A stretch of 64,000 nt of DNA. Source: Styela clava. Its lineage: Eukaryota. Numbering within the stretch: position 1 is the stretch's first letter; each line of letters begins with the position of its first letter. Shown in pieces: positions 17,301 to 62,209 of the stretch. The notes under the pieces were generated by a model. The model saw nothing but the letters and a program-made list of their open reading frames with translations. It made no database searches and had not been told where the DNA came from. The stretch lies in NCBI RefSeq assembly GCF_964204865.1, contig NC_135262.1, positions 9,796,001 to 9,860,000 of the forward strand, written 5' to 3'. Position numbers and translations under genes: made by a program.

Positions 17301-19597
17301 GCCATTGGGTTCCACAAGTTATAATGATTTTACTGGTGATTTTCCATAATATATGTATCAACTTTTCATAGAGTATTTCCACATACCAATTATAATGAAT
17401 GGGTGAAATATTCATTTTGCTGCAATAAATCTAGGTAAAGTTGGAGCATTTTAGTTACAAAAACAAGACCAAAGAGCAATAATTTGTGATTTTGTTAGGC
17501 TTTCCAATGGATCAGTATATGAACATGATACAGAAAAAAGTTCTGTAGAATTGATCTCCAATTAAAGTCAAATCAACCATCCTTACCAGCTACAAGTTGA
17601 AATAATTTTACTAGAATTGTAGTCACATGGGGGAGTTTTTAAATGCCTTATTCACAGGGGAATAGTGTTAATCAGGATTAATGTTGTATGGCAATTATGC
17701 AGAAAATAAGCCTTTGACATAAGCCGCATTATAATAAAGGATTAAATTCCAGAATTTGGGTAATAGAAATAAGATACTCTTTTTTTTTTTATTCCCGTAT
17801 GTATTTTAATATTCAATTTTATGCATTTTTTCAAATACTCACATATGTTGCAATATTGGCCCCTGAAAGTAGATAACAGCCATAAACACCGAAGCAAATT
17901 CTTAATTTACTAGTTTGGGTTAAAACATGAGGTTTGCATCTCATGTGAGAAAATTATATGTGAGAAGATTGCCCAACTCATCATCGCTGTAAGGTGGTTC
18001 ATGAAACCACTTGTCAGTTACAGCTTCCTCCACCATCAAGTGCATCTGAAAGGAATAACTGGGTAACTATTCCTTCATCCCATGTGGTTAATATAAATAT
18101 TTACCCAGCAATTCGAAAGCATAAACTATGAACTCTGTATTGCAAAAATGAGCATTTTTGTTCGCTTTTTAAACATGATGCCATTTACATTCAAAATATT
18201 GCTAAGAGAAGAAATGAATAACAAATCTTACCCATGCTATGACCCATTAGCGACACATTGTCATATTTGAAATCTGCAAAAAATGCGATAATATATTTCA
18301 AAAATCTGTACTGAACATACAAACAGCTGGATTGGTGCTATATGCTAATCGTTGGTAACAAATTTGAAATCACATTGTGTGCAGAGAAGTATGTGTAACT
18401 CCAGGTTTGTCATGGTTTCTTGCACCATATTTAATTATACAAATCATAAAAGATGTTTAATTTTACTTACGATCAATTACTCTTTTTAAAACAGAACTGT
18501 ATGCAGCAGTGAAATAGAAAGATCCTTTAGGAAAATGAGATGAGAGTCCATGACCAGGCACATCAAATGTGACGTAATAGAAATCTATTGGAAATTGATT
18601 GAATAATTTACGTTTATTGGCATAGCACAAATACACATAAGATTTGGATTTGACAGCGATCAATAATAATATTATGAATACTCAGTAGCCTACCAATAAG
18701 CATGACAAGAATTAAAGCTTTAGCACAATGCTCATAGGTCAAAGTTTCGAATACAAGATATAAAAATAAATTGTTTGCAAGAATATTTTCGGAATCTTCA
18801 TCAAAAATAGTTCATTTAACCGCTAAAGGATACAACGTTCTCCCAATTAAATCCTGGGTATCAGAAACTTTAGCCTAGCGATTAATGCATCAGATGTATC
18901 TATGATGGCGTCGTAGCTTAATTAGGATGGGGTGAATTGGACAGGCATAAAGATTCTGGTCATTCTTTTAAAATTAAATAGTTCCTTACATATCAGTGAC
19001 TGCCTGTGCAGAGCCTTGTTCTAAGCAAAAGACTATGAATGCATTGTATAAAAACGCTGTTGACTATGACCATACCTAACTAGGAATTGTATTCATAAAG
19101 ATACTATAGACAGATAGGCCTAATTCTGTGATTCTTGTGAGTGGATCAAAATCAGAGAGGTAGAGATTAACAAGATATTGCAGAAAAATGATGAAACACA
19201 TTTAATCAACTTATAACCTGAACAATGAAAATTTATTGTATATCCCATTTTTTCCTATAGATGTATTACCTTGAGGTAAAAGTGGAATAAGTTTATCAAA
19301 AGTATTGCAATTATCCAACCATCCGTGTAAACAAATAATTGGTGGATTTTTCTCATCTCCCCAGGTTTTTCCAGCAATTTCCCCCCATGGTACAGGGACA
19401 GAAAACTCCTTGGTCAGACCTAGAATAAAAGAGATTTTCATCAATAATTTTGTATTGAAATTTTTAGAGTGGGATCTGTTTTTTTGTGAATTCCAAATTC
19501 TGGGCTATTTCAAAAATATTAGCCAAAATGAGTAGACCTACCACAACTACCACTTACCTCGTTTGGTTGTCCCAACATATTTTCCAACAGAAGCCAT
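14319..19597 (-). CDS. SERHL: Serine hydrolase-like alpha/beta-hydrolase (SERHL family), copy B, ends SNL
   Basis: 11 exons (minus): 19558-19597 (MASVGKYVGTTKR), 19270-19419, 18471-18584, 18232-18273, 17843-17862, 17125-17199, 16540-16646, 15837-15916, 15344-15458, 14780-14867, 14319-14456. Exons 2-9 have the same sizes as in copy A. Motifs LHGWLDN, DVPGHGLSSH, GHSMGA, GNHHLHL; ends GNGSNL*. Confidence 0.92.
15965..16233. mobile_element. Helentron/DINE-1-like non-autonomous element, family 1, copy 1
   Basis: Closely matches 33169-33406; carries an (ACAG)n microsatellite and a terminal stem-loop TACTTACxGATT-AA-AATCxATAAGTA; no TSD seen. Class assignment is inferred from architecture. Confidence 0.65.
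17915..18090 (+). repeat. Degenerate SINE-like repeat copy
   Basis: Shares AATTATxTGxGAAGATTG...AAGGTGGTTCATG...TTAC.GCT.C.TCCACCAT with the reverse complement of 54870-55170, and part of this with 59125-59370. Confidence 0.45.
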
Positions 19598-21790
19598 TGT
19601 TCGTCTAAAATCAACAAACACTCTACTGCATATAACACGAAGCATAGACCTTGGCAATCATTCGAATCGATTGATACAATCAAAAATTTAAAAGGTGATG
19701 AGTAACCATTACTCAGCAAATTTGTTGCAACGCCCATGTACCGCCCATAAATTGCCAGAACGTAAGCAATGTTTAGTTTTTGAAACTAGTGGTGCTGCCA
19801 CTGAACTGGAAATCTATATCTCTGTGGGTGCTGCGGAGTCGCAGTTTGGCATGTTTTGGTGACGATGAGAAAAAGTGGGAGTCTTTTTATCATAATGATG
19901 AAAAAAATTGCGTACAGAAATTAAAAGAAAATTAAGTTCACTATTCGTTCATAACAGTTTATTAAAAAAGGTTTGAATACGCCAGCGTTTTCATCATATA
20001 TCAAATTTAGTTTCCCGGTGAGTTTAGATATGTAGTCGGAGTCGAATTTCCGTCAACCTGAAAAAGGGAGCCAGAGTCGAAGTCATATATTTTTTAACAA
20101 GCAGTCGGCTTAAAAAAAAATTTCCACACCCGTGAAGACTAGTGTAAATCACCATCAGGTTTTATTGTAGAACACACGACTTATGTTTATGTTTTATTTT
20201 ATTCTTATTTATTTTAAAAAGAACGTGCTTTGGACATATCTCCAATTTGAATCTAGTTACATGGGTAGGCTAGTGTCAGTATAATAATATAATATCTGGT
20301 CACAGGTAATTCTAAAACTAGTTTCAGACACGGAAAGGTGAATGCAACTTCTTTTTGTACAAACAAACTCTATATGGCGCTATTAATGATGTATAGATAT
20401 GATATTTTGATGAAATCATTCCATCTCCGCGTCAATACTGTAAATATAACTTTCAATTTTGTTATCGATGGATGAAAGTTTTCCGGTCAGCCTGCGACTA
20501 ATTGCTGTACTCATCCGCATACTGTAGACGCCAACGCTCGTCAACGAAAATGGCAAATCCCTATATAGCCGCTCTAGGGCATCAATCAATGAATTGTCCA
20601 CGGCCTTGCACTCAACAGAAACAAAGTCTGTTATCTTTAATGATATCAAATGCTTCAGATAGCTGTTTATTTTAAGACAGCATCGTTAAATATAATAAAT
20701 ACGCAACAACAAGGAAATAAAACGTGCATTTTGGAGTGCTGTACAGAAACGTGAGTGAAAAACATCTGCATTTAAATTTTAATGAATGTAAACAACATGT
20801 AAGTGCTGATAATAAACTCAACACAATTTGTGAATAGACATGATGTACCAGAGGTATCTGGGCAAAGTAAAATGTGGATTGTAAAAATACAATGCGCCGT
20901 TTTCAAAGCACACTAAGAAAAAATTATGCTGGTTCGTCAAAATATTCATTTTTGAGTGAAAAGAGAAAGGAATGTATTTTGTCAATGGTAATTTAAAATC
21001 AGTGAATATAACAAGTGCATTTGAAAATAAACACCTGGTTGCAAATATAAAAATACTGTATTTAGATACAAATATGCTATCTCAACGATTCTAAGTAGGG
21101 TTAAAAACTGAATTCTACGAGAATGCCTTTATGAGGTTAAATGCATACAAAAGTAACAGCCAGAAATGTTTGCTATATAACCTAAATTCGGATAGATAAT
21201 AATTCATTAACCATTCGTTTAGTTGTTGTTTAAAAATATATGAAATCTAGTATATTATACAATATGAATAATAATAACAATATAAAACATTATAACAGTT
21301 TTTCGAAACTTCATTACAATATAGTAGCAAATTAGATGATAAAGTTGATCCAAAAATGAATGAGAGTTAGGCTAAAACATCTGCTGCAAAACTCAATTCT
21401 AAAACAAAAGATGAAAATGCTGTCGTTTCCAAACTATCAAGATATGGACGGTGTGAAGAATTATGAAGTGAGTGACAAATCAAATAGCCTACGTGTTGCA
21501 CTAGGGCCATGTATGCACAAGCGGAGGAATGAGACGGTCCGAAACAATTTCATAGAATGAATCAATTCATTGCGAATCAACAGGAACAAATATTGCAAAC
21601 ATTTTCGTGAAAAAGGGAAATACAAAGTACATTTGAACAAAATATGCCAGTGACTTTTAGTCCTTTTAAACTGCAATCTACCTCAACTAAACAAATGCAT
21701 AGAAAAGTGAGCAAATTTCACGCCAGGACTCCGTCAACAGTATTCAAATGAATAATCAAGTAGTGGAAAGTCAAAGGCTGCAAAAGCTCA

Positions 21791-23683
21791 TCAGTGCGAA
21801 TGAAAATGTGTTACACAGCAAATCAAAAGAGAAAAAATATATACAAATGAGTTATAAATAGTACAATTGAGAGAATAGCCTTTCGAAGATACTCCTGATA
21901 TGGTTGCTCCAATGGTCACGTTCAAATGTGAGATTTGACCATTGCGTAATAGTTGTGCCGCCATTTTCCCATCTTGACGTGTTATAGTCAGAGCTGAAAT
22001 TTTTGTGCCTGTAAAATTGTAAACAAAAACATAAGCAACTGAAAGCATGTTGCACATCCTGCTATTTCACAGTGACATTAATTATTATCATCGCTGCTAT
22101 GATTTTAGAAGTAGCAATTGAGGTGACGATTTATATGACTTTTTGGCGTGATTAAAATCATTTATGTGAATATTTTTCAAAAATAATATAACTTAAAAAT
22201 AATCCTACCTATAGTGTTCATCACGGTTGGCTCGTCTTTGAAATCTTCATCATAAATAATAACGGCTTTAGCCGAATACTTTTCGGCAAGTTTTATTTTT
22301 ACAACATTGTTGCACTTTCCAGCTTCAATCAATGCGATCCATTCACCCTTCGTCGATTTGATTTCTTCCTCATTCGAAAATGCTCCCGTGCATCCGAAAT
22401 GAGAGTTTTCAGTTCCCACGTCTATGACATGGACCAGACGCCCAGAAAAAGCAATACGTGGTGAATACCGACCATATCTAGCAGTCGTTCTTTGAAATGG
22501 AATTTTACCAACTTCGACAGGATTACTTGAATCGAGACGAAAATCGACAATAGCCTCTGTGTAGCTGTATTCTGCAACCTTCGGTATCAAGTCCGATGCT
22601 TCGATGTTTATTGCGCCGACACTTATGTTGATATATATTTTGTTACCTTGTTCAATTTTCCGTACCAGTGCTCCGCCGTCAGCGGCGTTCACCATCAGAG
22701 ACATGATTTTTGTACCTACAAGTAGAAAAGTATGGCTCAATTATTTACGATTTATTTATTGTGACACACACAACACAACAACTCTTTGCAGTCAGACTAT
22801 TTGAATTAAAAATTACACAGATGTTTTCAATATTTTTGCCAATGCGCAAAAGGCTAGTTAAGGATATAATATGTGGGTCGGTTTTATGTATTTGTATATC
22901 GGAAAAGACTTATGTGTTTAGTACGTGTATTTATTTTTGCTTTTAAATAATGCACTTACCGATAGTACGCATTACTTCCACAATTCTCCGAGGTACCGTG
23001 TCGTAAACAATAACAGCTCTTGCGCCATATTTTTCCGCCAACTTGATCTTGAAGAAAAACTTGCATTTCCCTCGAGCAATTAGGGCAATCCACGGACCTC
23101 CGACGTTTGCAACTTCTTCCTCGTTAGCAATTTTGCCACTGCATCCAACATGAGAATCATTGAAACCAGCATCAGATACATGAATTATTCGGCCAAATAC
23201 GTTACTGTGGGGAGAATGAAATCCAAATTTTCCTTTAAAATGCAGCTCGGAAGCGGTCGATACGCTAGACATGATCTCGGTTTTATTTTGCACGGGAATT
23301 GGAATAACAAACGCGCTCAACAAAGCCTCGGTATAATGATTTGTTGTGTTGCTATTTCTGAGACTTGGCAAGTTGTCAAAAAGACTTTGTCCGCCTAGCA
23401 ACGAAGTACGTCGGCCTAAAAATTCCTCAATATATTTGCTCTTTATGTTTTGTAAATCTTCAACAAGCAGAGCTGAATCGTCGGTAGTAGTTGCTAATGA
23501 CGAAGTTGTGACTTCATGTTCACGGTTGCGCTTCTTTCCCCTAAGTCGCCCTTGATTTCTCAACTTTCTCCTTTCGTTCTTTGACCTCGCACGTTCGGAG
23601 GATTTTCTATTCAATCGACACTCCGAGATCTCAAGCAAAGCGACTGCGAGCGTTAAAACCAACAGAAGATGAATCAACCTCAT
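21791..23683 (-). CDS. Secreted/surface protein with two tandem Goliath (RNF130/150)-type PA domains and a GPI-like or TM tail, no RING; 482 aa, 3 exons
   Basis: Exons 22960-23683, 22209-22715, 21791-22008; both introns phase 1, GT-AG. Signal peptide MRLIHLLLVLTLAVALLEISEC. PA1: GKFGFHSP...HVGC...WIALIARGKC...AVIVYD. PA2: ARYGRYSP...HFGC...WIALIEAGKC...AVIIYD. Tail ISGVSSKGYSLNCTIYNSFVYIFSLLICCVTHFHSH*. Confidence 0.85.
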
Positions 23684-26600
23684 TGTGAAAGACTTAGTTG
23701 TAAACAAAACGTATAATATAACTGGAAACAGAAAGGCTTAGTTATTACATAAACAATATAATCTATTATGAGTTTTGAAAGTCGCGTGAAGGAATGCACT
23801 ACACGATTGAAGATTGTCCACCGAAACGTCACTCACATCGAGGGTATAGTGCCCTATTTGTAACCTTCAATCATAGCAGGCCATCCCGAACGTTCATAAT
23901 GATTAATTCCGAAAGACCAAAATGAATACAACCCTCTATTTGGATAACTTTGAGAAGATATTCTATATCCTACATATTTTCTACCTGCTAGCATTCACGG
24001 AATTTATATCTCGAGAGTGCTTGGTACTCACTGCTATCACATATGGGTTTGTACCAGTTCAAAATTACTGCACATAATTGGCAAGGGCGGTGAGCTCGGA
24101 AACTCGGAGCTAGTCCTGCCTGATTAGCTGAAATATTCCTCGTCAACAGCTTATGTCCCGTACAAACTTTTTTGCGAACTACACCTAATCACTTGTTTAC
24201 CGCTAATATTGCACCAGCTTGCACTGGTAATTCAATATACTGATACAAACATTTCTTATCTGTAGTTTTCACAGAATTATTCTTGATTGCCATACGTGAA
24301 ATGATTAGTGACGCCTGCGCTTAAGCTCCGGGAGGTTTATCGCCACAAGATAACTTTCCTGTTTCACAATTGTAAACAAACAATATCTCGACAGGGTCGA
24401 ATAATGAAGTGCAGTGAATAAGTAGTGTCGATGATTATAATAGGCTTATGAAACTTATTATATACTTATTTTTTCTAGGAAAGATAACAGCAGGATAAAC
24501 GGAAACGAAATGCTCATTCGATATGTACGCTACAAATCAGTACGATTCACACTGAAGTTAGATTGGTAATCATTTTCTCCCTGTGCTATGTTAATCTATT
24601 TGTTTTCCTGCCTTGTTTCTCCTCTCACTATTTTTGTAATTCCCCCTATAATATTGAACACCAAACCAGTTATTTTTACTCCCTTGTAGTCATTATGTAT
24701 AACCATGCGTGCCTATATGCTTTCTACGTTTTATAATTCAATAACCTACATACGGAAACCAAACTAAAAAGTTAGTTGTTGCTAGGATAATGGAAAGCAT
24801 CTATTCTAAACCCTCATCAACATCATTGCAATGATTTCTCACGTAAACGCTCCAAAGTTTTTATATAAAAATCTATTGGTTAACACGGCAAACTGTTACT
24901 ACCGGCAAATAGATAAACCAAAACAAAAATTATTTCGAAGCCGCGAGTTCACAGGAATTCCTTGCTGTTGACGAGAGGAAATTCCACGTTCCGCCGCGCC
25001 TCACGCCATCCCCACTTTTGAAGAGTGCGTGCTTTCGGGGAAGAGATGTTTCATTTTGTTTCAAATTCTATTTTTATAAAGGCTTATGATTATTTTCCCT
25101 CGCGACTATCTCGCTTCAAGCGTAATGTTTTTACAAACGAGTCGCCACTTCGACTAGCGCGTTTTTTTAAAATAATAGGTGACCAACCAACCATGGGACA
25201 TATAAATGTTACACTTCACTTATGGGGTTCAAACATGATCCACACATAGAGTTTTAAAACATTCGCGGACGTTCAAGGGTGAATACTTTGTATGGGTCAA
25301 GGCGCGCATTAGGCGGCTAATGGATCTTCCGCGTGTTGTCATATTTTTGTCTTTATCAAAGTATTTTTGAAGTTCGTGTTCATAAATACATTAAATTGTC
25401 AACAGACGTAGAATTATTATATTTTTATAAGCATTTGATCATGCTTTACACGTCGTCTTCTCTGATTTTTAAATATTTCGGATGACTATATCAGTTTTGG
25501 GACACAAAAACAACCTTTAAATTAAAGCGCCGAAACTTCACACTCGCGTGTACGCGTTTCATTTTTGAGTGCTTGAAACGTTCAGGTAATACTTACCATA
25601 AAAATTATTGCTAGGAGCAATTCTGCCTTAATTTGGTAGTTTTAGCAGGAAAACGGCAATAAGTTACTATTGAATAAGATATCAATATGAGCCCTCCCAC
25701 TTCTTATTAACTTCTTTTTATAATAATTTGTAAAGTGTGATTAAGTTCCTTTCAAATAGTTTTGATCTGTTGTTAAGGTAGATTTTTCACCATGGCTCCG
25801 TAATTAGTTATACTTTGTTTACCAATTTACAATAAGAGCGTGTAGTCTATCAACCTCGTTGCCTATTAGTCGCCACTGTTAAAATCATAGCGTTTTTATA
25901 GTTTTCAGGAAGCCAATCCCCGCAGAATTAATCAAAGTTGTCAAAAAACAACCAAATTTGGAATGTCATTTGGGATATAAGTGGCATCTTTCTGTATCGA
26001 GTACTTCGGAAGCCGCTCCTACGCATATTGGTCTCATCCCTGTTGATTAGTCCTTCTCATTAACGCATATGGCGCCATTTGTTCATTACCCGCTACGCAG
26101 TATGCACATCCCAACCCCTGGCGCTCACCCGCAGATGAGACCGAAGGTGCCAAATGAAGATATTCGCTGTCAGGGGTGACCGTTATGATTTATGAGGAAT
26201 ACAAAAAATATTTGAGGATATAATAGTTTCATGGGTGTGACGACAAACGACAACATCTCCGAAGAAAACACTTTTCTGTTGGTAGCCCTTGCCAAAATTA
26301 TCACCAATGGTATTCTAGAAAAAACTTAAGTTCTTTTGATATATTTCCCGAGTGATTTGAATTTCTTTCAACTCTTTGTCTTTGGTGAAATCGATGGCGT
26401 TATGTCATAACTAAACGGATAGCCCATTATATTCATGCTATAACGCTCATTCTTAATTGAACTACTGTATGACACCTTGCAATGATGAAGTACTTTAAAT
26501 TTAAGATAATTACACTGATGCTATCAAGTTAAATATGTTTATTCGGATACGTTCAGGCAAATTTTTCTTATATGAATTGGAAATCATTTCATTCACTTTC

Positions 26601-37783: not shown

Positions 37784-40700
37784 ATGAGAACAACAATTAT
37801 TATCATTTTTTCTTGGATAACCACACCCCTGTGTCAAGGTGAAACTCTGCTTCACTGTTCACCAAAACCGGGTTGTCAGATTGCTCAATGCGACATAGCA
37901 GCAGAATGGATGCAAGATGTCAATTTGGGAGAATATCTCAACAATAATGAGTATCCTCTCACATGTAAATGGAAGAGTGGCGGAAAACCACACAGCGACG
38001 AAAATTTGCTAAACATAATGTACGAAAACGCAAAAAGTATGTTAGTTTGAATAAAATGACATTGTTCAACTATCAATGTCAATTAATTTTAACGTTATGT
38101 TAAATTACAGATATTGAAAAAGTGAAATCAGAACTGAAAAACTCAGAAAGAAAGTTTGTTAAAACTACAGAACACGAGAAAGGTGAATTCACAAATTTTT
38201 AAGCAAGGCAAATGGTTTGAAGCAAACCAACAAACTTAATGAACGCAAAGATAATATATATATATGTTATTTTATGTGTTAATTACTATCTGCCTGAATA
38301 TTGCTCGGCATCAATTTCCCGATTTGGGTATGGTGCCGAAGATACATCAAAATTATAATGAAAACAGCTGATGATTCAATGTGTACCGTAGTACTTAGTT
38401 TTGATATATATATTATACTCTACTAAGTTCTTACTTATCTGACTGTTTTAAACATTGTACAAATGAATATATCGAACGCCGAATGTTAGAAATCAAATAT
38501 TATATAAACTGGTTGCTTGGAACTATTTGGTCTTGTTTCTTAATTTTAATGTTACACTCTTCCCTGCTATTTTCTTCATTTCAAAAATATTTTTTATATT
38601 TAAATATATATATATAAAATAGAGCTGCAGGCATTACGAGAGAAGAATCAAGAGCAAGATGCTCAAATAAAAGTCTTACGTGCAGGTAATAGTTTCATTT
38701 TTTAATATAAAAGTTACGATGGATCGATCACCTTAATATCGCCTCACTTACCATTGGATAGCATTATCGACAACAGTGCGATAATATTTCATAAAAAGCT
38801 ATATATTTGTAATAAAGTGGACTGGTGTTATCCAATATCAATCGATGTATAAATACTAGGGATGGGACAAGATTCGGATCCGGACTCGGATTCGAGTCGA
38901 ATCCATGCATTTTTGCGACTCGGATTCGATTTCGAGTCCACGCCATTTTTACCGAGTCCCTATTCAATTTTGTTTTACATAATTGACGCCTCCATTATGC
39001 GATTTTAACGTTATAAAAGTCAGTATAAGCAATATTTTTACAAAATAATGTGATTCGTCACGTGAGAGATCTCTGAAAACATACGCACATATTGTATCAC
39101 AGGAGCTTATCAGACATTTCAGTCATTTCGTCGCTAGTGACCATATCCCAATAAAAACATCAAGGCTACTTTTGGTGCGCGAACCAATAAATTACTCTTC
39201 GTAAACAAAACAGATAGGAGAGCATCCCCAAGGAAAAATTTATTAACACGTTTTAATTACAGTTTATTGCATGCAATTTGCTTCTTGAAAAATAAGAAAG
39301 CAAGAAAAATTTGCTAAAAGCAACGAAATTATGTGTGCTACTTGCGAAATAACAGTTTTATAGCTAATAGCATCTGAAATCATGCAAGCGTATTGTAGTC
39401 AAAATTGAGTTTCTTTAGATTGACATGCAAGAATGTTAAAATTTTCGACGTTTTTTGGTTTCAGACGGTTACGTAACAGCGACGTTACAACGCCAGCTGT
39501 GCTAAAAAGACGCTCAGAATTGACGGAAGTAGGCGGGCATGAAAGCAAGCTTACGGCTAGAGCGAACATCGCCTGGCATTCATTTCTGTATTGTGGCCAA
39601 AAAACAAGTGGAGACTTGTGCCTTTTAAGAGTAGGTGCAGCAAGATATTGCCTGACAGCAGTTACAATATCAGCATTCATATCCACCTGTTCCCTGACAA
39701 GACCCGCGTTCTCAGGTGCACCGAAGACCACACTATCTTCGGCCTCTTCTGATGATGATGATTGATATAATTCAGTCCCTTCGTAGAGTTCAACACTATC
39801 CGTGGCAAACTTCTTCACTTCAGTAACAAGCAGCCGTTCGATTTCTTGCCGATTGATAGTTGAGCACCATGACAACTTTAATCTTGGATCAAGTATTGTA
39901 GCCAATAAACAACGGTTATATGAGGCCTGGTTCTGAAAGTATGCGTCTCGGGGCTGAGGTCCATTTCCAGGAACGCTAAATCTCCGTTCTATACCACTTT
40001 TGAGGCTATTCAGAAAATTGTCGAGTCCATAAATATCGCTGTCACCAATGAATGCTTCCAATCTTTTCAACAAATTCTCTTTTACTGGTAGAATGCTTGC
40101 TATTGTCGCCTCCTCAGTACAAACTTCCTTGGTCGCTATGTCAAATAACTTCAAAACTCGAATTAAAGATGAAGCCATTCTCCACTGGTTAGGTGACAGA
40201 GTATTACCAATTCCCCTGAAGGGCATATCATTAATAACTTCTCTCTGTTCCACCATTCGCTGCAGCGCGTAGTATGTAGAGTTCCATCTGGTACTCACGT
40301 CTTGTTGCAATTTATGTTCTGGTGCATTCAGCCTTTTCTGACATTCCCTGAGAGCACGAGCGTCGCGAGATGAGCGGTTATAGTGGGCAATTATAGAACG
40401 GGCATCAGCCACGATATCTTTCACATCAATGTTTGATCTGATAGCGTCGTGAACGATCAAGTTCAAAGTGTGTGCCATACATCGGATATTAAAAATCTCC
40501 CCGTCCTTTAATGCCTTTATCACATTCGAGGCATTGTCGGATGTTATTGTAGCAAACGATACGCCCCACTCACTTTCTTGTCTTCGTATTTCTGACAGCA
40601 GCAATTCTGTATAAGAAGATTTGCATTTCCCACGACTAATTTTAGTTGCGCAAATGCCACATTCGGCCTCCGAACAGTCATCTTCACAAATTTTAAAATA

Positions 40701-42324
40701 CTGCCACGCAAGTGACTTTGCTTTCGGTGATGACATCGCAACAGACAATCAGCAGAAGCGGAAACCTTCTTGAAGTAAAGTTGCCAAAAGCAGTCTAATT
40801 CCACCCGTAAATCTTATCAAAAACAATCAACCTTGAGTAGCTTATTATACAATCATCCAAAAGATTCACGCAATAAGTCGGTAACTGAACTGTACGCGAA
40901 GCATGGCAAGAAAACAGTACGTCACCGATCGCGCATTGTTGCGTCACAATTGAAACCGTGTTTTTGCCGTTTTCATTGTGACGTCACGGACTCGACGGAT
41001 TCGACTCGAGTCCATGACCTATTACTCGGATTCGCCGAATCTCTGTAATGCCGGACTCGTCCCATCCCTAATAAATACCTTCAAAAAACTAGCGTGCTTT
41101 ACGACACACATTTCTGGCATTAGACTCGCTGTTATTTAATTCCTGCCAAATATTTGTATCGCATCAAGATAAAATTGCGTTTCTTTCATTAATTAATGAA
41201 TGTTATCTTATTGAACGTTCCCATTATTTGATGGGTAAATATCTATGCCCCCGGATTAAAAACAGGGTGAATCGATCGAGTCCTCTATATTTTGCGCGAA
41301 CGTAGAGTGGTTTGTGCAGGTTTTCATTACGGCTTGTTATGCGTTTGATCATAGATTACAATAAAAATATATATTTTGCTATTATCTAAGAAAATATCAT
41401 TTATTTGAAATATCTATTTTATTACTAAGCGTTGACAAGTATGGAAGAAAAACTGAAGAAGATCGAAAAGTCAAATCATCCGTTCATCACTCCAATTACT
41501 ACAGCACCACCGATGAAAGATTCAGGTTTGAATAACTAATCAAAGAATATTGAATTCATTTTTGAACGAGTATAATTCAATTCATTTATTATTCCGTAAC
41601 GTAATGTCCATATGAAAACAGAAAAACACGGAACATTTATTATATAAAAAAAATAGAACGCAATAAATAAGCACAGTTGAAAAAAAATGAGATGACGTGA
41701 AATTCACCATAAGCACTCTTGTAGAAAACTCCGTTATAAATATATTATTCAATTGTGTTATATTATATTACTATGAAAACATCACATTACGTTATTTTCA
41801 TCACACGCATTCAACAGTGTGCGAAATAAAGACAACAAACTCGTGTTATTCGATTACGATACATAAGAGGCTCGATATTGATTATTATGAAGCGGAAAAC
41901 ATTTGTAAGAAGAGAAATTCTGTCATTGCTCAGATTTACGATGAAAAATCCTACGAAACTATTATCAATCATTCGAGAAAAACAATGCCAGCACAAGAGA
42001 ATTGGATCCAACTTTGGATTGGAAGTACGATCAACCCACTAGTAAGTTAGAAACAATTTGGAGAAGAGAACTTGATATATATATATATATACAGAATAAT
42101 ATTTTCTATCCTAACTCAACTTTTTTTAGACTGGAGACATAACCCCTACAAATGCATACATGAAATGGTTTCCAGGGCGCCCAAGACGAGGGGAATTAAA
42201 TAATGAACAAACACACATTTATATTTATATGGGACGAGAAGCGACAAATCCTCGGCAAGGAATGGTCAATATACAACCATCATTCTACAGGAATGGAGTT
42301 CTATGTCAACTGCTAAACTACTAA
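37784..42324 (+). CDS. Secreted coiled-coil plus atypical C-type-lectin-like domain protein, 300 aa, 6 exons
   Basis: Exons 37784-38036, 38111-38182, 38623-38685, 41430-41525, 41818-42041, 42130-42324 (903 nt, phase-consistent). Signal peptide; Cys-containing N-domain; heptad neck (ELQALREKNQEQDAQIKVLRAALTSMEEKL); CTLD motifs C..NSCY, YYEAENIC, LWIG, KWFPGRP, GVLCQ. Confidence 0.85.
38857..41070 (-). mobile_element. hAT (Ac/ZBED4-like) DNA transposon, internally deleted, in intron 3 of the lectin gene
   Basis: TIR TAGGGATGGGAC / GTCCCATCCCTA; perfect 8-bp TSD ATAAATAC (38849-38856, 41071-41078); dense GATTCG/GACTCG subterminal repeats; 2214 bp. Confidence 0.95.
39399..40736 (-). CDS. Defective hAT transposase (partial BED finger fused to the catalytic C-terminal half)
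   Basis: ATG at 40736. Partial BED finger AWQYF...CGIC, then SDNASN, CMAH (CxxH), TRWNST, LLDPR-like ILDPR, and C-terminal dimerisation-domain motifs PLVFW and SERLFS. The rest of the BED finger and the first catalytic Asp region are missing. Confidence 0.85.
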   Translation of the reverse strand: MSSPKAKSLAWQYFKICEDDCSEAECGICATKISRGKCKSSYTELLLSEIRRQESEWGVSFATITSDNASNVIKALKDGEIFNIRCMAHTLNLIVHDAIRSNIDVKDIVADARSIIAHYNRSSRDARALRECQKRLNAPEHKLQQDVSTRWNSTYYALQRMVEQREVINDMPFRGIGNTLSPNQWRMASSLIRVLKLFDIATKEVCTEEATIASILPVKENLLKRLEAFIGDSDIYGLDNFLNSLKSGIERRFSVPGNGPQPRDAYFQNQASYNRCLLATILDPRLKLSWCSTINRQEIERLLVTEVKKFATDSVELYEGTELYQSSSSEEAEDSVVFGAPENAGLVREQVDMNADIVTAVRQYLAAPTLKRHKSPLVFWPQYRNECQAMFALAVSLLSCPPTSVNSERLFSTAGVVTSLLRNRLKPKNVENFNILACQSKETQF

Positions 42325-50919: not shown

Positions 50920-51759
50920 ATGGCTATGCAAGCCATTCGAATAGCACTCGTGCAGATGGCCGTTGGCTCGAACAAACTAGAAAATGTGAAGAAAGCCTGC
51001 AGTCTCATTAAAAAAGCAGCTGATGACGGTGCAAAATTGATCAGCTTACCAGAATGTTTCAACTGCCCATACGGAACGAAATTTTTTCCAGAATATGCCG
51101 AAAATATTCCTGGACCTTCTACTGGTTCTTTAGCAAATTCTGCCAAAGAGAATAAAATTTATCTCATCGGAGGTTCGATTCCAGAAAAGGATGGTGATGG
51201 AAAGTTGTATAATACTTGTACAGTTTGGAACCCTGATGGCGAAATGATTGCGAAATATCGAAAAATGCATCTCTTTGATATCGATATTCCAGGGAAAATA
51301 ACTTTTAAAGAATCGGAAGTTTTAAGTCCTGGAAATGATTTTGCTACGTTCGATGCATTTTCTATCAAAATTGGACTGGGAATATGCTACGACATTAGAT
51401 TTGCCGAAATCGGGCAGGTGTATCATAAATTAGGATGCCAACTGCTGGTTTATCCTGGCGCTTTCAACATGACTACTGGTCCAATACATTGGAAATTATT
51501 GCAACAGGCTCGTGCAGTTGACAATCAGTTATATGTGGCGAGTATATCTCCTGCAAGAGATGAGAACGCATCATATGTTGCATATGGCCATTCGATGATA
51601 ATCGGACCTTGGGGCGATTGTGTTGCAAGCGCAGAGGCAGGAGAACAGATAGTATATGCAGATTTGGAATTTACAAAAGTTAGTGAAGTACGAAAAAATA
51701 TCCCCACTTCAGTGCAAAAAAGGTTTGATGTGTATAAATCTTCAGAACAGGCCACTTAG
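50920..51759 (+). CDS. NIT2: Omega-amidase NIT2 (nitrilase superfamily), intronless, 279 aa
   Basis: Glu-Lys-Cys triad motifs [34 protein letters not shown]; NIT2-typical [24 protein letters not shown] and [14 protein letters not shown]; AATAAA at 52005. Confidence 0.95.
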
Positions 51760-59960: not shown

Positions 59961-60827
59961 TTAAAATCTATGAAGTGCAATTTGAAGTAATCCATATTGT
60001 AAAAACACAGGAAAAGGAATCCATAATTTAAATAAACGCATTCTAGTTGCATGAGTAATTATTGCATTACTACTTTTGAGTTGATTCGCTTGATGCAAAC
60101 GAACTTGTGATGCTTGAAAATAGGAACATGATTTGCATTGAGGATATAACTTCCCTACAATAGATTTGTTTCGTTTCAAATATTGTTCTGCAAGTGCGAC
60201 AGGTGGGTTGTGATCAGCAAAATAGTCAACTTTGACCCTCGAAGACGAACCAAAAAGCTTCTTCCATAGCTTAGAAGCAGTAGATTCAAACCTATTATAA
60301 CGTTTTCCACACGTGTGACATCCATGTCTTTCTCCAAGAAGCTGGATTTTTGATAAGTGAGTCTTTGTGACCCTTGCGGTTAGCGTTGACAACGCAACAT
60401 GCTCAACAGCAAATGCACCAGGATGCAGAATATGACTCGGACACAAACTCTTCAAACGCCCACCGAAAAGCTTGAATACAATAATAGTGAATGCAGCATA
60501 AGAGCATGTATTAAAAAAAGTCTCCTTTTCATCTTTACCAAGAAAATAATCCAATTCTCTCGCATTGATATGCTTTTCGACGATAACAAACGATGTCGCC
60601 GCACATGCACTAGCAACGGTTAATGAAAATGCTCCACATAAAGGTGCAATTTTCTTGTTTGCAGTAACTCTGATAGGTTTCCATACAAAATTCTGCATAA
60701 GCCCTAATATGGTTGGAAATGTCGCCATCCCAGCGAATGAAGACAACAATAATTCGGCTCCTCTTTGTAGGATGTCTGCTCTGAATTCACTGTCTTCTGC
60801 CATGGCTAATATCTTCTGATTCTTCAT
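59961..60827 (-). CDS. Intronless membrane protein with a zinc-binding HNH-type nuclease motif, copy 1 (DH intact)
   Basis: Single ORF; ATG at 60827 or 60803 (gccATGg). Three N-terminal hydrophobic helices, then GCHTCG ... ADHNPP ... LYPQCKSCSYFQ, then a hydrophobic C-terminus. Confidence 0.8.
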   Translation of the reverse strand: MKNQKILAMAEDSEFRADILQRGAELLLSSFAGMATFPTILGLMQNFVWKPIRVTANKKIAPLCGAFSLTVASACAATSFVIVEKHINARELDYFLGKDEKETFFNTCSYAAFTIIVFKLFGGRLKSLCPSHILHPGAFAVEHVALSTLTARVTKTHLSKIQLLGERHGCHTCGKRYNRFESTASKLWKKLFGSSSRVKVDYFADHNPPVALAEQYLKRNKSIVGKLYPQCKSCSYFQASQVRLHQANQLKSSNAIITHATRMRLFKLWIPFPVFLQYGLLQIALHRF

Positions 60828-61456
60828 TTTTTTCACTCACTGAATAGTTAAATTAACAACCTAAGGAGACATAATATTTTAATGAAAAAGTGTATAAGAA
60901 TACTGCAGTAAAAAATTATATGAATACAGTGAGAGATGTGAAATAAATGCTTATAAAAAAAATTACAGTGGTAATATTGCGGGCACTAATTTTTTGATTG
61001 ACATGGATGAAACCAATACACCTTATGTCACATTTTAAAATTGTGCGAAATTTATTTTCTAATTTTGAGTTACCAATGACTTCTCTAAACCTGTACATGG
61101 TAGGAATGTGATATTCCTCACAAAACACCATACAAGTATTGCACCAAACATTGTGTGTTTGAGGATAGATGGAGTACACCCCCATAATTTATTTTGGACA
61201 TGGAACTACTTCACAGGTCACAATACCGAAATTGGGACATATTATCTAGATATCCACCTTAGAATATTGGGTAGTGTTATCAAATCTAGAGAAAACGAAC
61301 AAGTCCATGACAGAAAAAAACTATTTCATAAAAAATGTGACATAAGCTTTTGATTTTACGCAGGCAATTATAATTATTGCAAATAGTAGGAGTAGATTTC
61401 CAAATTCATATTTTAGCAATTGAAGAATCATAATTAAATAAGTCATAAAAACTTAT

Positions 61457-62209
61457 TCAAAATGATATTTTTTGAAGAGCATTTTGCAGAAAACCATATT
61501 GAAATAAGATTGGAAAAGGAACCCATAATTTAAAGAGCCGTAATCTTGTTGCATGAGTGATTATTGCACATTTATTTTTCAAAACATCGTTACTGTAAGT
61601 TGGAAGGGTCTTTGAAATTTCAAGACGAGAACAGGATTTGCATTGTGGGTACTCCGTTAACATAAAGAGTGGATCTTCCTTCGGAATTTTTTCATTAGGA
61701 ATTCTCAGCAATAAGCTTTTAAGTACAGAAATGAATTTTTCGATTTTATTGCCACGTTTGCCACAAATGTGGCATCCATGTTTTTCTCGCAGAGCTTTCA
61801 ATTTCATCATGTGAGACTTAGAGACGACAGTTGTTTCCGGTAGGGGTAAATCTTCATTAGCGAAAGCACCGGCATGCAAAATATGACTAGGACAAAGATT
61901 TCTTAGGCGACCTCCCAACAATCGAAAACTTATCAAAGCGAGAACAGTATAAATAAAAAAGTTGAAGACAGTCTCCAGTCTACTTTTGCATACAAATACG
62001 CCTCGCTTATTTCCATTCAGAAGCATTTCAGTGAGAACAAAAGCAAAAGCTGAACAAGTGTTTGAAATGATTAGAGTCACTATTCCACAAAGTTTTGCAA
62101 CTTTTCTGTGAGCTGTAACATTAATAGGCTTCCATACGTAGATTTGAAACAACCCCAAACATATTGGAAACACCAGAATTCCAGCCAAAGTAGCCAAAAT
62201 CAAATCCAT
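61457..62209 (-). CDS. Intronless paralog of the TM-HNH protein, copy 2, lacking the DHxPP motif
   Basis: 250-aa ORF colinear with copy 1 (VWKPI.VTA, GGRL..LCPSHILH.GAFA, HGCHICGKR, YPQCKSCS, AIITHATR.RLFKLW.PFP..QYG.LQ.AL). The spacer between CxxC and YPQC is 37 aa rather than 54 and has no Asp-His. Confidence 0.8.
   Translation of the reverse strand: MDLILATLAGILVFPICLGLFQIYVWKPINVTAHRKVAKLCGIVTLIISNTCSAFAFVLTEMLLNGNKRGVFVCKSRLETVFNFFIYTVLALISFRLLGGRLRNLCPSHILHAGAFANEDLPLPETTVVSKSHMMKLKALREKHGCHICGKRGNKIEKFISVLKSLLLRIPNEKIPKEDPLFMLTEYPQCKSCSRLEISKTLPTYSNDVLKNKCAIITHATRLRLFKLWVPFPILFQYGFLQNALQKISF

What the first reader, a model, noticed from the sequence alone, without database searches (positions are those of the whole stretch)
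21791..23683. RING-less, double-PA, probably GPI-anchored relative of Goliath/PA-TM-RING E3 ligases: a candidate decoy receptor
Seen: signal peptide, two full PA domains of Goliath type, then small residues (SGVSS), a spacer and a short terminal hydrophobic stretch (FVYIFSLLICCV) ending 6 aa before the stop. No RING-H2 exon was found downstream. Established: RNF130/149/150/128 and RNF43/ZNRF3 use a single luminal PA domain for substrate or ligand recognition and a cytosolic RING to ubiquitinate membrane proteins. Inference: a bivalent ectodomain with no ligase could bind the same substrates or ligands and protect, sequester or cross-link them, a dominant-negative architecture I do not recognise as described.
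Basis: partly seen in the sequence, partly recalled or inferred. Interest (0 to 1): 0.75.

Follow-up and report, generated by a model that had tools for sequence, protein, structure and literature searches.

The report
RING-less double-PA Pen-1 family gene
This sea-squirt gene encodes a probably membrane-tethered protein with two PA binding domains and no ubiquitin-ligase part; it belongs to an ascidian family already in print (Pen-1 / Rnf149-related), so only the doubled domain is new.

Summary
A three-exon minus-strand gene (23683..21791) encodes 482 aa: signal peptide, K/R-rich stretch, two PA domains and a short hydrophobic C-terminus. Spliced transcript contigs from 4 of 4 runs show both introns and run unspliced through the stop into a ~1 kb 3'UTR. 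No TM-RING exon lies anywhere in the 64 kb window. The model equals RefSeq XP_039256061.2, "uncharacterized protein", Styela clava.

The PA domains are Goliath/RNF150-type. However, the RING-less architecture is already described. The gene falls in a starred clade with Halocynthia HrPEN-1. Ciona Pen-1/Rnf149-r was published in 2023 as a PA-only protein lacking the RING. A "natural dominant-negative of Rnf150" idea was tested there and ruled out for that phenotype (PMC10219245).

Three things are new. The PA module is duplicated internally. PA2 has lost the Arg and Phe of the RGxCxF cargo loop. A GPI-signal-like tail is shared by all 5 distinct full-length family members, so the whole protein would lie outside the cytosol. 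GPI anchoring itself is untested.

The scan also noted the single-PA paralogue on another contig (s1-822933). Interest is modest.

The parts
23684..23935 (-). 5'UTR. The upper limit is only as far as a transcript contig reaches.
   Evidence: X1 record 5 covers 23502-23935 and X6 record 22 reaches 23720.
22960..23683 (-). Exon 1 coding part: start codon, signal peptide, basic stretch and the N-part of PA1. It ends in phase 1 after T-I-G.
   Evidence: (joint 22712/22957, cut +3).
23618..23683 (-). Predicted signal peptide, about residues 1-22.
   Evidence: Hydropathy maximum 3.10 over residues 7-17. The cleavage site is my estimate; no predictor was run.
23528..23617 (-). K/R-rich stretch, residues 23-52, with 15 K/R in 30 residues.
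   Evidence: At least 11 K/R per 30 residues occur in 15 of 19 family rows, against 3-8 in 7 Goliath-type rows.
22615..23338 (-). PA1 module, residues 116-275, interrupted by intron 1. Its RGKCKF loop lies at 23057-23074.
22716..22959 (-). Intron 1, 244 nt, GT..AG.
22209..22715 (-). Exon 2: C-part of PA1, a linker and the N-part of PA2. This is the fused exon left by the internal duplication.
21908..22566 (-). PA2 module, residues 292-444, interrupted by intron 2. Its loop reads AGKCNN at 22306-22323.
22009..22208 (-). Intron 2, 200 nt, GT..AG.
   Evidence: (joint 22007/22208, cut +1).
21791..22008 (-). Exon 3 coding part: C-part of PA2, a stretch rich in small residues, the hydrophobic tail and the stop.
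21812..21847 (-). C-terminal hydrophobic stretch, residues 465-476. It is a candidate GPI-attachment signal or short membrane anchor.
   Evidence: Other strains carry one more Leu here (a 3-nt insertion at 21847/21848 in X2, X5 and X6; also P0151).
20728..21790 (-). 3'UTR, about 1.06 kb.
   Evidence: Contigs X5 record 17, X6 records 21 and 22, and X1 records 2 and 3. Poly(A)-signal hexamers lie at 20783 and 20671 on the minus strand.

Best explanation
This is the Styela clava member (LOC120332810) of the ascidian Pen-1 / Rnf149-related family. These proteins descend from a Goliath/RNF150-type PA-TM-RING ubiquitin ligase that lost everything beyond the membrane segment.

Shown:
- The gene is expressed and spliced as read.
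- It has a signal peptide, a K/R-rich stretch, two PA modules made by an old internal tandem duplication, and a 12-13-residue hydrophobic C-terminus.
- It has no RING.

Inferred:
- The whole protein lies on the luminal/extracellular side and is held to the membrane by a GPI anchor, or failing that by a minimal tail-less anchor.
- It acts without catalysis, by binding partner proteins.
- PA1, with its intact RGKCKF cargo loop, does the canonical binding.
- PA2, whose loop reads AGKCNN, has a changed or structural role.
- By analogy with Ciona Rnf149-r, the protein would influence cell-fate signalling from outside the cytosol, and its mRNA may be a maternal posterior-localised RNA.
For: Identity.
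- A profile search of 1.84 billion representatives returned the model itself (P0001, 482 aa), the paralogue (P0002), and 19 further proteins at E 1e-38 to 7e-16 before generic PA proteins begin at 1.7e-13.
- P0001 is XP_039256061.2 of Styela clava. P0005's cluster holds HrPEN-1 of Halocynthia roretzi. P0010 is a Ciona PA-domain protein.
- The three exon translations are exact substrings of P0001 at residues 1, 243 and 412.
- In the tree (45 rows, 117 columns) the family forms one clade at 98/97*. PA1 joins HrPEN-1 at 94/89.

Printed family description. Ciona Rnf149-r is Pen-1, has a PA domain and lacks the RING (PMC10219245).

Descent from Goliath-type ligases.
- Searches show the nearest outside relatives are Goliath-type.
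- The phase-1 intron after T-I-G is shared with the paralogue. My reading of the exon-only fragments, which end at the same spot, is that Goliath-type genes share it too.
- The family's hydrophobic tails align on the Goliath TM helix.

Expression and constraint.
- Spliced contigs appear in 4 of 4 runs laid, and 9 guessed-RNA runs of 3 studies hold the stretch.
- Of the 30 listed coding SNPs, 14 are synonymous and 16 are not, over 330 and 1046 sites, giving pN/pS of about 0.36.
- The frame is intact in a second assembly version (P0151: 20 substitutions and one extra residue).

Topology.
- There is a hydrophobic N-terminus.
- Two Cys are invariant across 145 aligned relatives.
- N-x-S/T sequons are present.
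- The tails of 5 of 5 distinct full-length family members (plus a second S. clava version) are 12-16 hydrophobic residues, followed by 1-6 residues, with G/A/S/N clusters 7-12 residues upstream and no cytosolic segment.
Against:
- Orthology to HrPEN-1 rests on an unstarred branch (94/89).
- I could not verify that the Ciona protein P0010 (F6SPQ8) is KH.C2.994. The link to the 2023 paper rests on the name Pen-1.
- Nothing is known of the function or mRNA localisation in S. clava.
- PA2 shows more non-synonymous than synonymous changes among the listed SNPs (6 to 3 by my count). These are small numbers, but PA2 may be drifting.
- A contig of run X1 leaves the reference at 21798. It reads on in frame for the ten codons its printed letters show, so a minority form with a different C-terminus cannot be excluded.
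Confidence: 0.6

Rival explanations
1. One reading: the protein is a decoy or dominant-negative for the Goliath-type ligase. It would bind the ligase's substrates or ligands through two PA domains and shield, sequester or cross-link them.
For: - The PA domains are Goliath-type.
- S. clava keeps a canonical PA-TM-RING gene of this type on C18, about 12,914,300-12,925,600, so a ligase to antagonise exists.
- The authors of PMC10219245 raised the same idea for Ciona.
Against: - In Ciona, CRISPR loss of Rnf150 gave no overt phenotype and did not rescue loss of Rnf149-r. The authors therefore ruled Rnf150 out as mediator (PMC10219245, passage). The data are in supplementary Figure S6, which I could not see.
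- PA2 lacks the Arg and Phe of the RGxCxF loop, whose Arg is essential in VSR1. True bivalency is therefore doubtful.
- The family PA domains share only about 20-30% identity with the ligase PA domains.
Confidence: 0.2
2. The tail is not a GPI signal. Instead it is a minimal type-I membrane anchor, a relic of the Goliath TM helix, or it is simply cleaved or ineffective so that the protein is secreted.
For: - MAFFT places the family tails on the Goliath TM helix, including the aromatic pair at its end.
- An unnamed relative, P0041, is PA-TM with a short tail and no RING.
Against: - The hydrophobic runs are 12-16 residues. By my own knowledge this is short for a stable helix and typical of GPI signals.
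- No basic stop-transfer residues follow in 4 of the 5 distinct full-length members.
Confidence: 0.3
3. The model is incomplete: TM-RING exons exist and the true product is an ordinary ligase.
For: - One contig of run X1 diverges at 21798 into sequence not found in this assembly.
- The RING of the related gene is split over exons, so simple pattern scans can miss it.
Against: - Contigs of 4 of 4 runs read through the stop codon into the 3'UTR. In X1 this is record 3, alongside the diverging contig.
- tblastn with 17 TM-to-RING queries finds nothing in 64 kb, while the control is 17 of 17.
- The next gene downstream is unrelated.
- 0 of 21 proteins of the family rank block carry a RING.
- The HrPEN-1 record (315 aa) also ends after the hydrophobic tail.
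Confidence: 0.04
4. The double-PA copy is a decaying duplicate with no function of its own.
For: - PA2 has lost two near-invariant loop residues.
- Its listed SNPs lean non-synonymous.
Against: - The frame is intact in two assembly versions and in the transcript contigs laid.
- The overall pN/pS is about 0.36.
- Eleven of the 13 invariant or near-invariant PA columns are kept in PA2.
- A PA2-type exon with the same PA-end/linker/PA-start layout exists in a second, unnamed organism at 31% identity, so the arrangement is old and has been retained.
Confidence: 0.06

Closest known systems
Ciona Rnf149-related (Rnf149-r, KH.C2.994) = postplasmic RNA Pen-1; and Halocynthia roretzi HrPEN-1 (Q8MXW0, BAC10969.1)
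   Same: - Both have a signal-peptide-like N-terminus, a K/R(H)-rich stretch, a Goliath-type PA domain and no RING. HrPEN-1 also has a short hydrophobic C-terminus.
- They share a clade with the window's protein at 98/97*.
- PMC10219245 describes the Ciona protein as having a PA domain and no RING.
   Different: - Those proteins have one PA domain; this one has two, and the second has a degenerate cargo loop.
- The 2023 paper's main text has no occurrence of GPI, transmembrane, signal peptide or secreted. The extracytosolic topology proposed here is therefore not discussed there.
- That paper's supplements (Figure S5, Table S3) were not seen.
- Function and mRNA localisation are known only for Ciona and Halocynthia.
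Goliath/GRAIL-type PA-TM-RING E3 ligases (RNF128, RNF130, RNF149, RNF150; Drosophila goliath)
   Same: - The PA domain type is the same.
- Two Cys are conserved, and PA1 keeps the RGxCxF loop.
- The intron position is shared.
- The tail is positionally equivalent to the TM helix.
   Different: - There is no full-length TM helix, no cytosolic part and no RING-H2.
- There is an extra basic stretch after the signal peptide.
- The PA module is duplicated.
GOLI-like protein of Mya arenaria (WAQ99501.1, P0031)
   Same: It has two tandem Goliath-type PA domains.
   Different: - It keeps the TM helix and RING-H2.
- Its two PA copies are near-identical sisters (100/100*), so that duplication is independent and recent.
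'RING finger protein 150-like' of Littorina saxatilis (XP_070197716.1, P0042, 194 aa)
   Same: It has a Goliath-type PA domain followed by a short hydrophobic C-terminus and no RING.
   Different: - It lies outside the ascidian family in the tree.
- It has no basic stretch and a single PA domain.
- It may be an independent loss or a truncated model.
Plant VSR / RMR PA domains
   Same: They share the RGxCxF cargo-binding loop, which is conserved in PA1.
   Different: - They are distant in sequence (E 0.003).
- They bind C-terminal vacuolar sorting signals. Whether animal Goliath-type PA domains bind in the same way was not shown in what I read.

Membership tests
Ascidian Pen-1 / Rnf149-related family | Sequence groups with HrPEN-1 and relatives, apart from RING-bearing Goliath-type proteins. 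| tested here: met
   The family clade of 23 rows has support 98/97*, and PA1 joins HrPEN-1 at 94/89. In the profile search, E-values of the family run from 1e-38 to 7e-16, and generic PA proteins begin at 1.7e-13.
Ascidian Pen-1 / Rnf149-related family | PA domain present and RING absent. | tested here: met
   PA; no RING.
Ascidian Pen-1 / Rnf149-related family | Signal-peptide-like N-terminus followed by a K/R-rich stretch (my own definition from the alignment, not from print). | tested here: met
   15 K/R in residues 23-52, and 15 of 19 family rows have at least 11.
Ascidian Pen-1 / Rnf149-related family | Single PA domain. | tested here: not met
   Two PA stretches are found. This is the variant feature.
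Ascidian Pen-1 / Rnf149-related family | Maternal mRNA localised to the posterior pole (postplasmic/PEM RNA). | not testable with these tools
   It is stated for Ciona in PMC10219245, citing Yamada et al. 2005. There are no data for S. clava.
Goliath/GRAIL PA-TM-RING E3 ligases | Luminal PA domain of Goliath type. | tested here: met
Goliath/GRAIL PA-TM-RING E3 ligases | TM helix followed by a cytosolic region. | tested here: not met
   There are 12 hydrophobic residues, then six residues and the stop.
Goliath/GRAIL PA-TM-RING E3 ligases | Cytosolic RING-H2. | tested here: not met
   (control 17 of 17). Transcripts read through the stop.
GPI-anchored proteins | N-terminal signal peptide, plus a C-terminal hydrophobic stretch at the very end with no cytosolic domain. 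| tested here: met
   by hydropathy only.
GPI-anchored proteins | Omega site: small residues at omega and omega+2, about 8-12 residues before the hydrophobic stretch. | tested here: inconclusive
   Candidates exist by eye (G-Y-S eleven residues before the stretch). No predictor was available. The rule is recalled, not taken from a call.
GPI-anchored proteins | Release by PI-PLC, or dependence on GPI transamidase. | not testable with these tools
   This is a bench experiment.
PRADC1 (PAP21)-type secreted PA-only proteins | Groups with PRADC1-type PA domains. | tested here: not met
   The genome has its own 193-aa PA-only protein on C2; 'PRADC1-like' is my recalled label for it. It sits on a very long branch outside the family, and its match to the family profile is only E 5e-6.

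The most novel reading that the evidence does not exclude
The whole Pen-1/Rnf149-r family, including the Ciona gene needed for pharyngeal-muscle fate, consists of GPI-anchored, entirely extracytosolic PA 'receptors'. They would have arisen when a Goliath-type ligase was cut off inside its TM helix, turning that helix into a GPI signal. They would act at the cell surface or in the secretory lumen, not on cytosolic MAPK components. The basic stretch would bind matrix or heparan sulphate, or be removed by a proprotein convertase. In Styela and at least one other organism, the PA module was doubled and the second copy lost the carboxylate-binding Arg. That would give a one-active, one-degenerate tandem that binds a new kind of partner or stiffens the stalk.
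Probability: 0.2. Interest if true: 0.6.

Novelty: new variant of a known kind. Interest (0 to 1): 0.35.

Why it matters
The only functional study of this family that I found treats Ciona Rnf149-r as a ligase relative and tests links to cytosolic MAPK signalling and to Rnf150.

If the family is, as the sequences suggest, wholly luminal or extracellular and GPI-tethered, its partners must be sought among secreted and surface proteins. That is a directly testable change of direction.

The Styela double-PA form, with one intact and one degenerate cargo loop, is a natural dissection of which PA features matter. Beyond that, this is an uncharacterised but already annotated gene of a known family.

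Tried and rejected
- Word-based protein search with exon 1: 968 candidates, none at E 0.001 or below. It missed HrPEN-1-like proteins that the profile search later found, so its blank meant nothing.
- Single-sequence PDB searches with exons 1 and 2: only weak matches, best E 0.037. The family profile was needed.
- RING regex: negative, but insufficient once I saw that the related gene's RING is split over exons. I replaced it with tblastn and a positive control.
- Timing of the duplication. The free tree puts PA1 with HrPEN-1 and puts PA2 with two unnamed fragments. The AU test does not reject a tree with PA1, PA2 and those fragments as one clade (lnL difference 5.85, p 0.085). Whether the duplication predates the split from Halocynthia is therefore open.
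- DNA-level comparison of the two copies and of the two introns: identity is no better than shuffles. The duplication is old and its breakpoints cannot be read from the DNA.
- The idea that the downstream exons at 18471-19799 were the missing TM-RING: rejected. They belong to a separate transcript and read like a hydrolase.
- Literature searches:
  - 'HrPEN-1', 'PEN-1 postplasmic', 'Hr-PEN1', 'PEN1 ascidian': 0 papers.
  - 'postplasmic' + 'PEN1': 0 papers.
  - 'postplasmic' + 'PEN-1': 2 papers, two versions of one work.
  - 'Rnf149-r' and variants: 4 papers, 2 of them relevant.
  - 'PA-TM-RING' + 'GPI': 3 papers, with the 2 listed being unrelated by title and abstract.
  - On these searches, in this library only, I found no printed statement that Pen-1/Rnf149-r is GPI-anchored or has a double-PA form. 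The original HrPEN-1 and Yamada 2005 papers are not in the library and were not read.
- Tree rows. Of the 46 domain rows, I dropped P0152 and P0005 (near-duplicates of P0002 and of HrPEN-1), recut the PRADC1-like row and added the RNF13-like row, giving 45 rows. The 18 non-family rows were my own pick from 129, favouring long, high-ranking proteins.
Full report
WHAT IS THERE. The window is G000:C17:9796001-9860000 of a 377-Mb assembly. The organism name, Styela clava, comes from the names of the matching public proteins.

On the minus strand I read a three-exon gene. Exon 1 is 23683..22960, exon 2 is 22715..22209, and exon 3 is 22008..21791. Both introns are GT..AG and phase 1, and both follow the residues T-I-G. 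The product is 482 aa.

Its layout is:
- a hydrophobic N-terminus (Kyte-Doolittle maximum 3.10 over residues 7-17);
- a K/R-rich stretch (15 of the 30 residues 23-52);
- PA module 1 (residues 116-275);
- a 16-residue linker;
- PA module 2 (residues 292-444);
- a stretch rich in small residues;
- FVYIFSLLICCV (residues 465-476), then six residues and the stop.

Pfam finds PA in exon 1 (E 7.5e-8) and exon 2 (1.7e-7), each covering the first two thirds of the profile. The last third lies in the following exon.

IS IT EXPRESSED AS READ? Nine runs guessed to be RNA, from 3 studies, hold 0.26-0.61 of the sampled words. That is about what exons alone would give. Four runs of a fourth study hold 0.99-1.00.

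I laid four of the nine runs, covering the 3 studies, on 18400-24300. All 4 show the joints 22007/22208 and 22712/22957 with CT..AC ends. Within the stated cut offsets these are my introns.

Contigs run unspliced from exon 3 through the stop to 21407 (X5) and 21570 (X6). Others carry on to 20728 (X6) and 20875 (X1). Poly(A) hexamers sit at 20783 and 20671. The 3'UTR is therefore about 1.06 kb.

Depth is about zero between 19976 and 20763. Below that lies a separate minus-strand transcript (exons 19556-19799, 19270-19417, 18471-18584). Its ORFs read like an alpha/beta hydrolase by eye, although Pfam gave nothing on the one exon I scanned.

NO RING. No RING-H2 pattern occurs in six frames. The genome's own Goliath-type gene has its RING split over two exons, so a pattern scan could miss it. 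I therefore ran tblastn with the TM-to-RING parts of 17 RING-bearing relatives against the whole window. The best E was 0.066, with a stop inside. All 17 of 17 hit the control locus at E below 1e-5.

One loose thread remains. In X1 alone (1 of 4 runs), a contig departs from the reference at 21798 and reads on in frame for the ten codons its 30 printed letters show. Those letters are not in the window or in the genome at up to 2 mismatches. X1 also has a contig that follows the reference there (record 3). I take the odd contig for a strain variant or an assembly branch, but I cannot show that.

WHAT IT IS. The word search with exon 1 found nothing. I then built a profile from three natural pieces: the PA N-halves of exon 1, of exon 2 and of the paralogue (alignment A3). 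I searched it against 1.84 billion representatives.

That search gave 546 proteins at E 0.001 or below. The top hit is a 482-aa protein with two matched stretches. Next come the paralogue and 19 further proteins at 1e-38 to 7e-16. Generic PA proteins begin at 1.7e-13.

The top hit is XP_039256061.2, 'uncharacterized protein LOC120332810 [Styela clava]'. My three exon translations are exact substrings of it. An older version, P0151 (483 aa), differs by 20 substitutions and one extra Leu in the tail. The same in-frame 3-nt insertion appears in the contigs of X2, X5 and X6.

P0005's cluster contains HrPEN-1 of Halocynthia roretzi (315 aa). P0010 is a Ciona 'PA domain-containing protein'.

PRINTED KNOWLEDGE. 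Vitrinel, Vogel and Christiaen 2023 (PMC10219245; I read passages) report the following:
- Ciona Rnf149-r (KH.C2.994) 'also encodes the postplasmic RNA ... known as Pen-1'.
- It has a PA domain but lacks the RING.
- Its lineage-specific CRISPR loss disrupts pharyngeal-muscle specification.
- Loss of Rnf150 gave no overt phenotype and no rescue, so they ruled Rnf150 out as mediator.

Their main text has no occurrence of GPI, transmembrane, signal peptide or secreted. Their supplementary figures and table were not seen.

RELATION TO GOLIATH LIGASES.
- Of the 129 hits ranked below the family, 17 have a RING-H2 pattern and 20 have the characteristic Goliath TM motif. Of the 21 that are at least 300 aa, 16 have RING-H2 and 16 have the TM motif. 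Many of the rest are exon-sized fragments. In the family block, 0 of 21 have a RING.
- Names given by the sources include 'protein goliath-like', 'GOLI-like protein' and 'RING finger protein 150-like'.
- A five-member family profile finds the RNF128 PA domain (3icu) first among solved structures (E 1.9e-10). Bacterial aminopeptidases follow at 6.8e-8 and 3.5e-7.
- In the tree (45 rows, 117 columns, LG+C20) the family forms one clade at 98/97*, set among Goliath-type rows whose mutual order is unresolved.
- The phase-1 intron after T-I-G is shared with the paralogue. In my reading, exon-only fragments of Goliath-type genes stop at the same place.
- MAFFT lays the family's hydrophobic tails on the Goliath TM helix.

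Together these fit descent from a PA-TM-RING gene truncated at the membrane segment. That descent is inference.

THE FAMILY IN THIS GENOME. The Pfam PA search of the assembly found 8 matches:
- the two PA domains here;
- one paralogue on C18;
- an intronless PA-TM-RING protein that I label RNF13-type from memory (zf-RING_2 E 8e-14);
- proteins that read like SPPL2 and a glutamate carboxypeptidase, by my own reading of the ORFs, not scanned;
- a 193-aa PA-only protein;
- one multi-exon gene.

The paralogue (P0002, 354 aa) has the same layout with one PA domain and the same intron position. It ends in a 15-residue hydrophobic run plus five residues.

A canonical Goliath-type PA-TM-RING gene also exists on C18, near 12.91-12.93 Mb.

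THE DUPLICATION. Exon 2 is the end of PA1 fused to the start of PA2. That is what a tandem duplication with one breakpoint in old exon 1 and one in old exon 2 would leave. It also explains the twin phase-1 introns.

The two copies share 52% identity over the N-part. They show no DNA-level or intron similarity above shuffles, so the event is old.

PA2 groups with two unnamed fragments (94/90). One of them, P0020 (162 aa), aligns to exon 2 from the end of a PA domain, through the linker, into the next PA domain at 31% identity. A double-PA gene therefore probably exists in at least one other organism.

Whether the duplication predates the split from Halocynthia is unresolved (AU p 0.085). HrPEN-1 has one PA domain.

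THE TWO DOMAINS ARE NOT EQUIVALENT. In 145 aligned relatives, C181, G205, C207 and K212 are invariant. G164, H168, W198, A200, L201, R204, F209, A221 and Y227 are at least 90% conserved.

PA1 keeps all 13 of these positions. PA2 keeps 11 and reads AGKCNN where PA1 reads RGKCKF. In Arabidopsis VSR1, the Arg of this RGxCxF loop makes salt bridges to the cargo's C-terminal carboxylate, and R95M abolishes binding (PMC8740768, passages). Transfer to animal Goliath-type PA domains is by analogy only.

Among the 30 coding SNPs listed (46 more rows were not shown), 14 are synonymous and 16 are not, over 330 and 1046 sites. That gives pN/pS of about 0.36. By my count, PA1 has 7 non-synonymous to 9 synonymous changes, and PA2 has 6 to 3.

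HOW IT MOST LIKELY WORKS.

Shown:
- an expressed, constrained protein with secretory-pathway features;
- two PA modules;
- no catalytic domain.

Inferred:
- The signal peptide puts the whole chain in the lumen.
- The C-terminal run is too short for a comfortable TM helix, is followed by no cytosolic tail, and is preceded by small residues. All 5 distinct full-length family members look like this.
- A GPI anchor is the best guess, at perhaps 0.55. A minimal TM anchor or release is the rival.
- The protein would bind partners through PA1. The basic stretch is a family hallmark absent from the 7 Goliath-type rows I compared. It might bind acidic matrix or be processed. The paralogue has R-x-K/R-R sites, but this protein has none by that strict pattern.
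- If the topology is right, any effect on cell fate is exerted from outside the cytosol.
- The decoy idea remains possible, but it has one negative test in Ciona and a degenerate second domain against it.

LIMITS. No GPI or signal-peptide predictor was available. The link between the Ciona record and KH.C2.994 is by name only. The joined model was not searched by me as such; I used the identical public record that the search returned.

Noticed in passing
window 21798 (run X1 only): A transcript contig departs from the reference seven bases before the end of the stop codon, with at least 255 unlike letters. The 30 printed letters are not in the window or the genome. The contigs meeting there overlap by 30 bases, which looks like a graph branch. 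This points to a possible strain variant with a different C-terminus.
   Followed up: partly
window 21847-21848: An in-frame 3-nt insertion in contigs of X2, X5 and X6 adds one Leu to the hydrophobic tail. The same extra residue is in the older RefSeq version P0151.
   Followed up: yes
window 21526 and 21423: There are 3'UTR length polymorphisms in other strains: 13 letters put in behind 21526 and one letter put in behind 21423, in X5 and X6.
   Followed up: no
window 23625 (run X5): The X5 contig ends with 30 letters unlike the reference, inside the signal-peptide coding part. The region also holds three of the 20 differences between the two RefSeq versions. I did not resolve whether this is a variant or a contig-end artefact.
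   Followed up: no
window 18471-19799, minus strand: A separate spliced gene lies downstream (exons 19556-19799, 19270-19417, 18471-18584, continuing below 18400). Its ORFs read like a serine-hydrolase-type alpha/beta hydrolase. Pfam found nothing in the single exon scanned.
   Followed up: partly
window 39399-40748, minus strand: A 449-aa open frame has a hAT dimerisation domain (E 4e-14) and a BED finger (E 3e-4). It is a hAT transposase copy with an intact frame.
   Followed up: partly
window 50920-51759, plus strand: An intronless 279-aa carbon-nitrogen hydrolase (Pfam E 1e-62). 'Omega-amidase/NIT2-like' is my recollection, not a test.
   Followed up: partly
window 59961-62209, minus strand: Two tandem related ORFs of 291 and 250 aa have no Pfam match. 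I did not test that.
   Followed up: no
G000:C18:1787856-1794114 (L010 856-7114): The single-PA paralogue (XP_039250123.2, 354 aa) has the same intron position, a 5-kb intron, and a tail of 15 hydrophobic residues plus five. It has orthologues among unnamed transcript contigs (P0003, P0004, P0006, P0009, P0012).
   Followed up: partly
G000:C18, about 12914300-12925600 (L023, L024): This is the canonical Goliath/RNF150-type PA-TM-RING gene of the same genome. Its RING-H2 is split between two exons.
   Followed up: partly
P0031, P0036, P0041, P0042 (public proteins, not in the window): Other architectures built on the same PA type: PA-PA-TM-RING in Mya arenaria; a PA protein whose C-terminal part looks like a C-type lectin to my eye (unnamed source, not scanned); PA-TM without RING (unnamed source); and a 194-aa PA-only protein with a hydrophobic tail in Littorina saxatilis.
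   Followed up: partly
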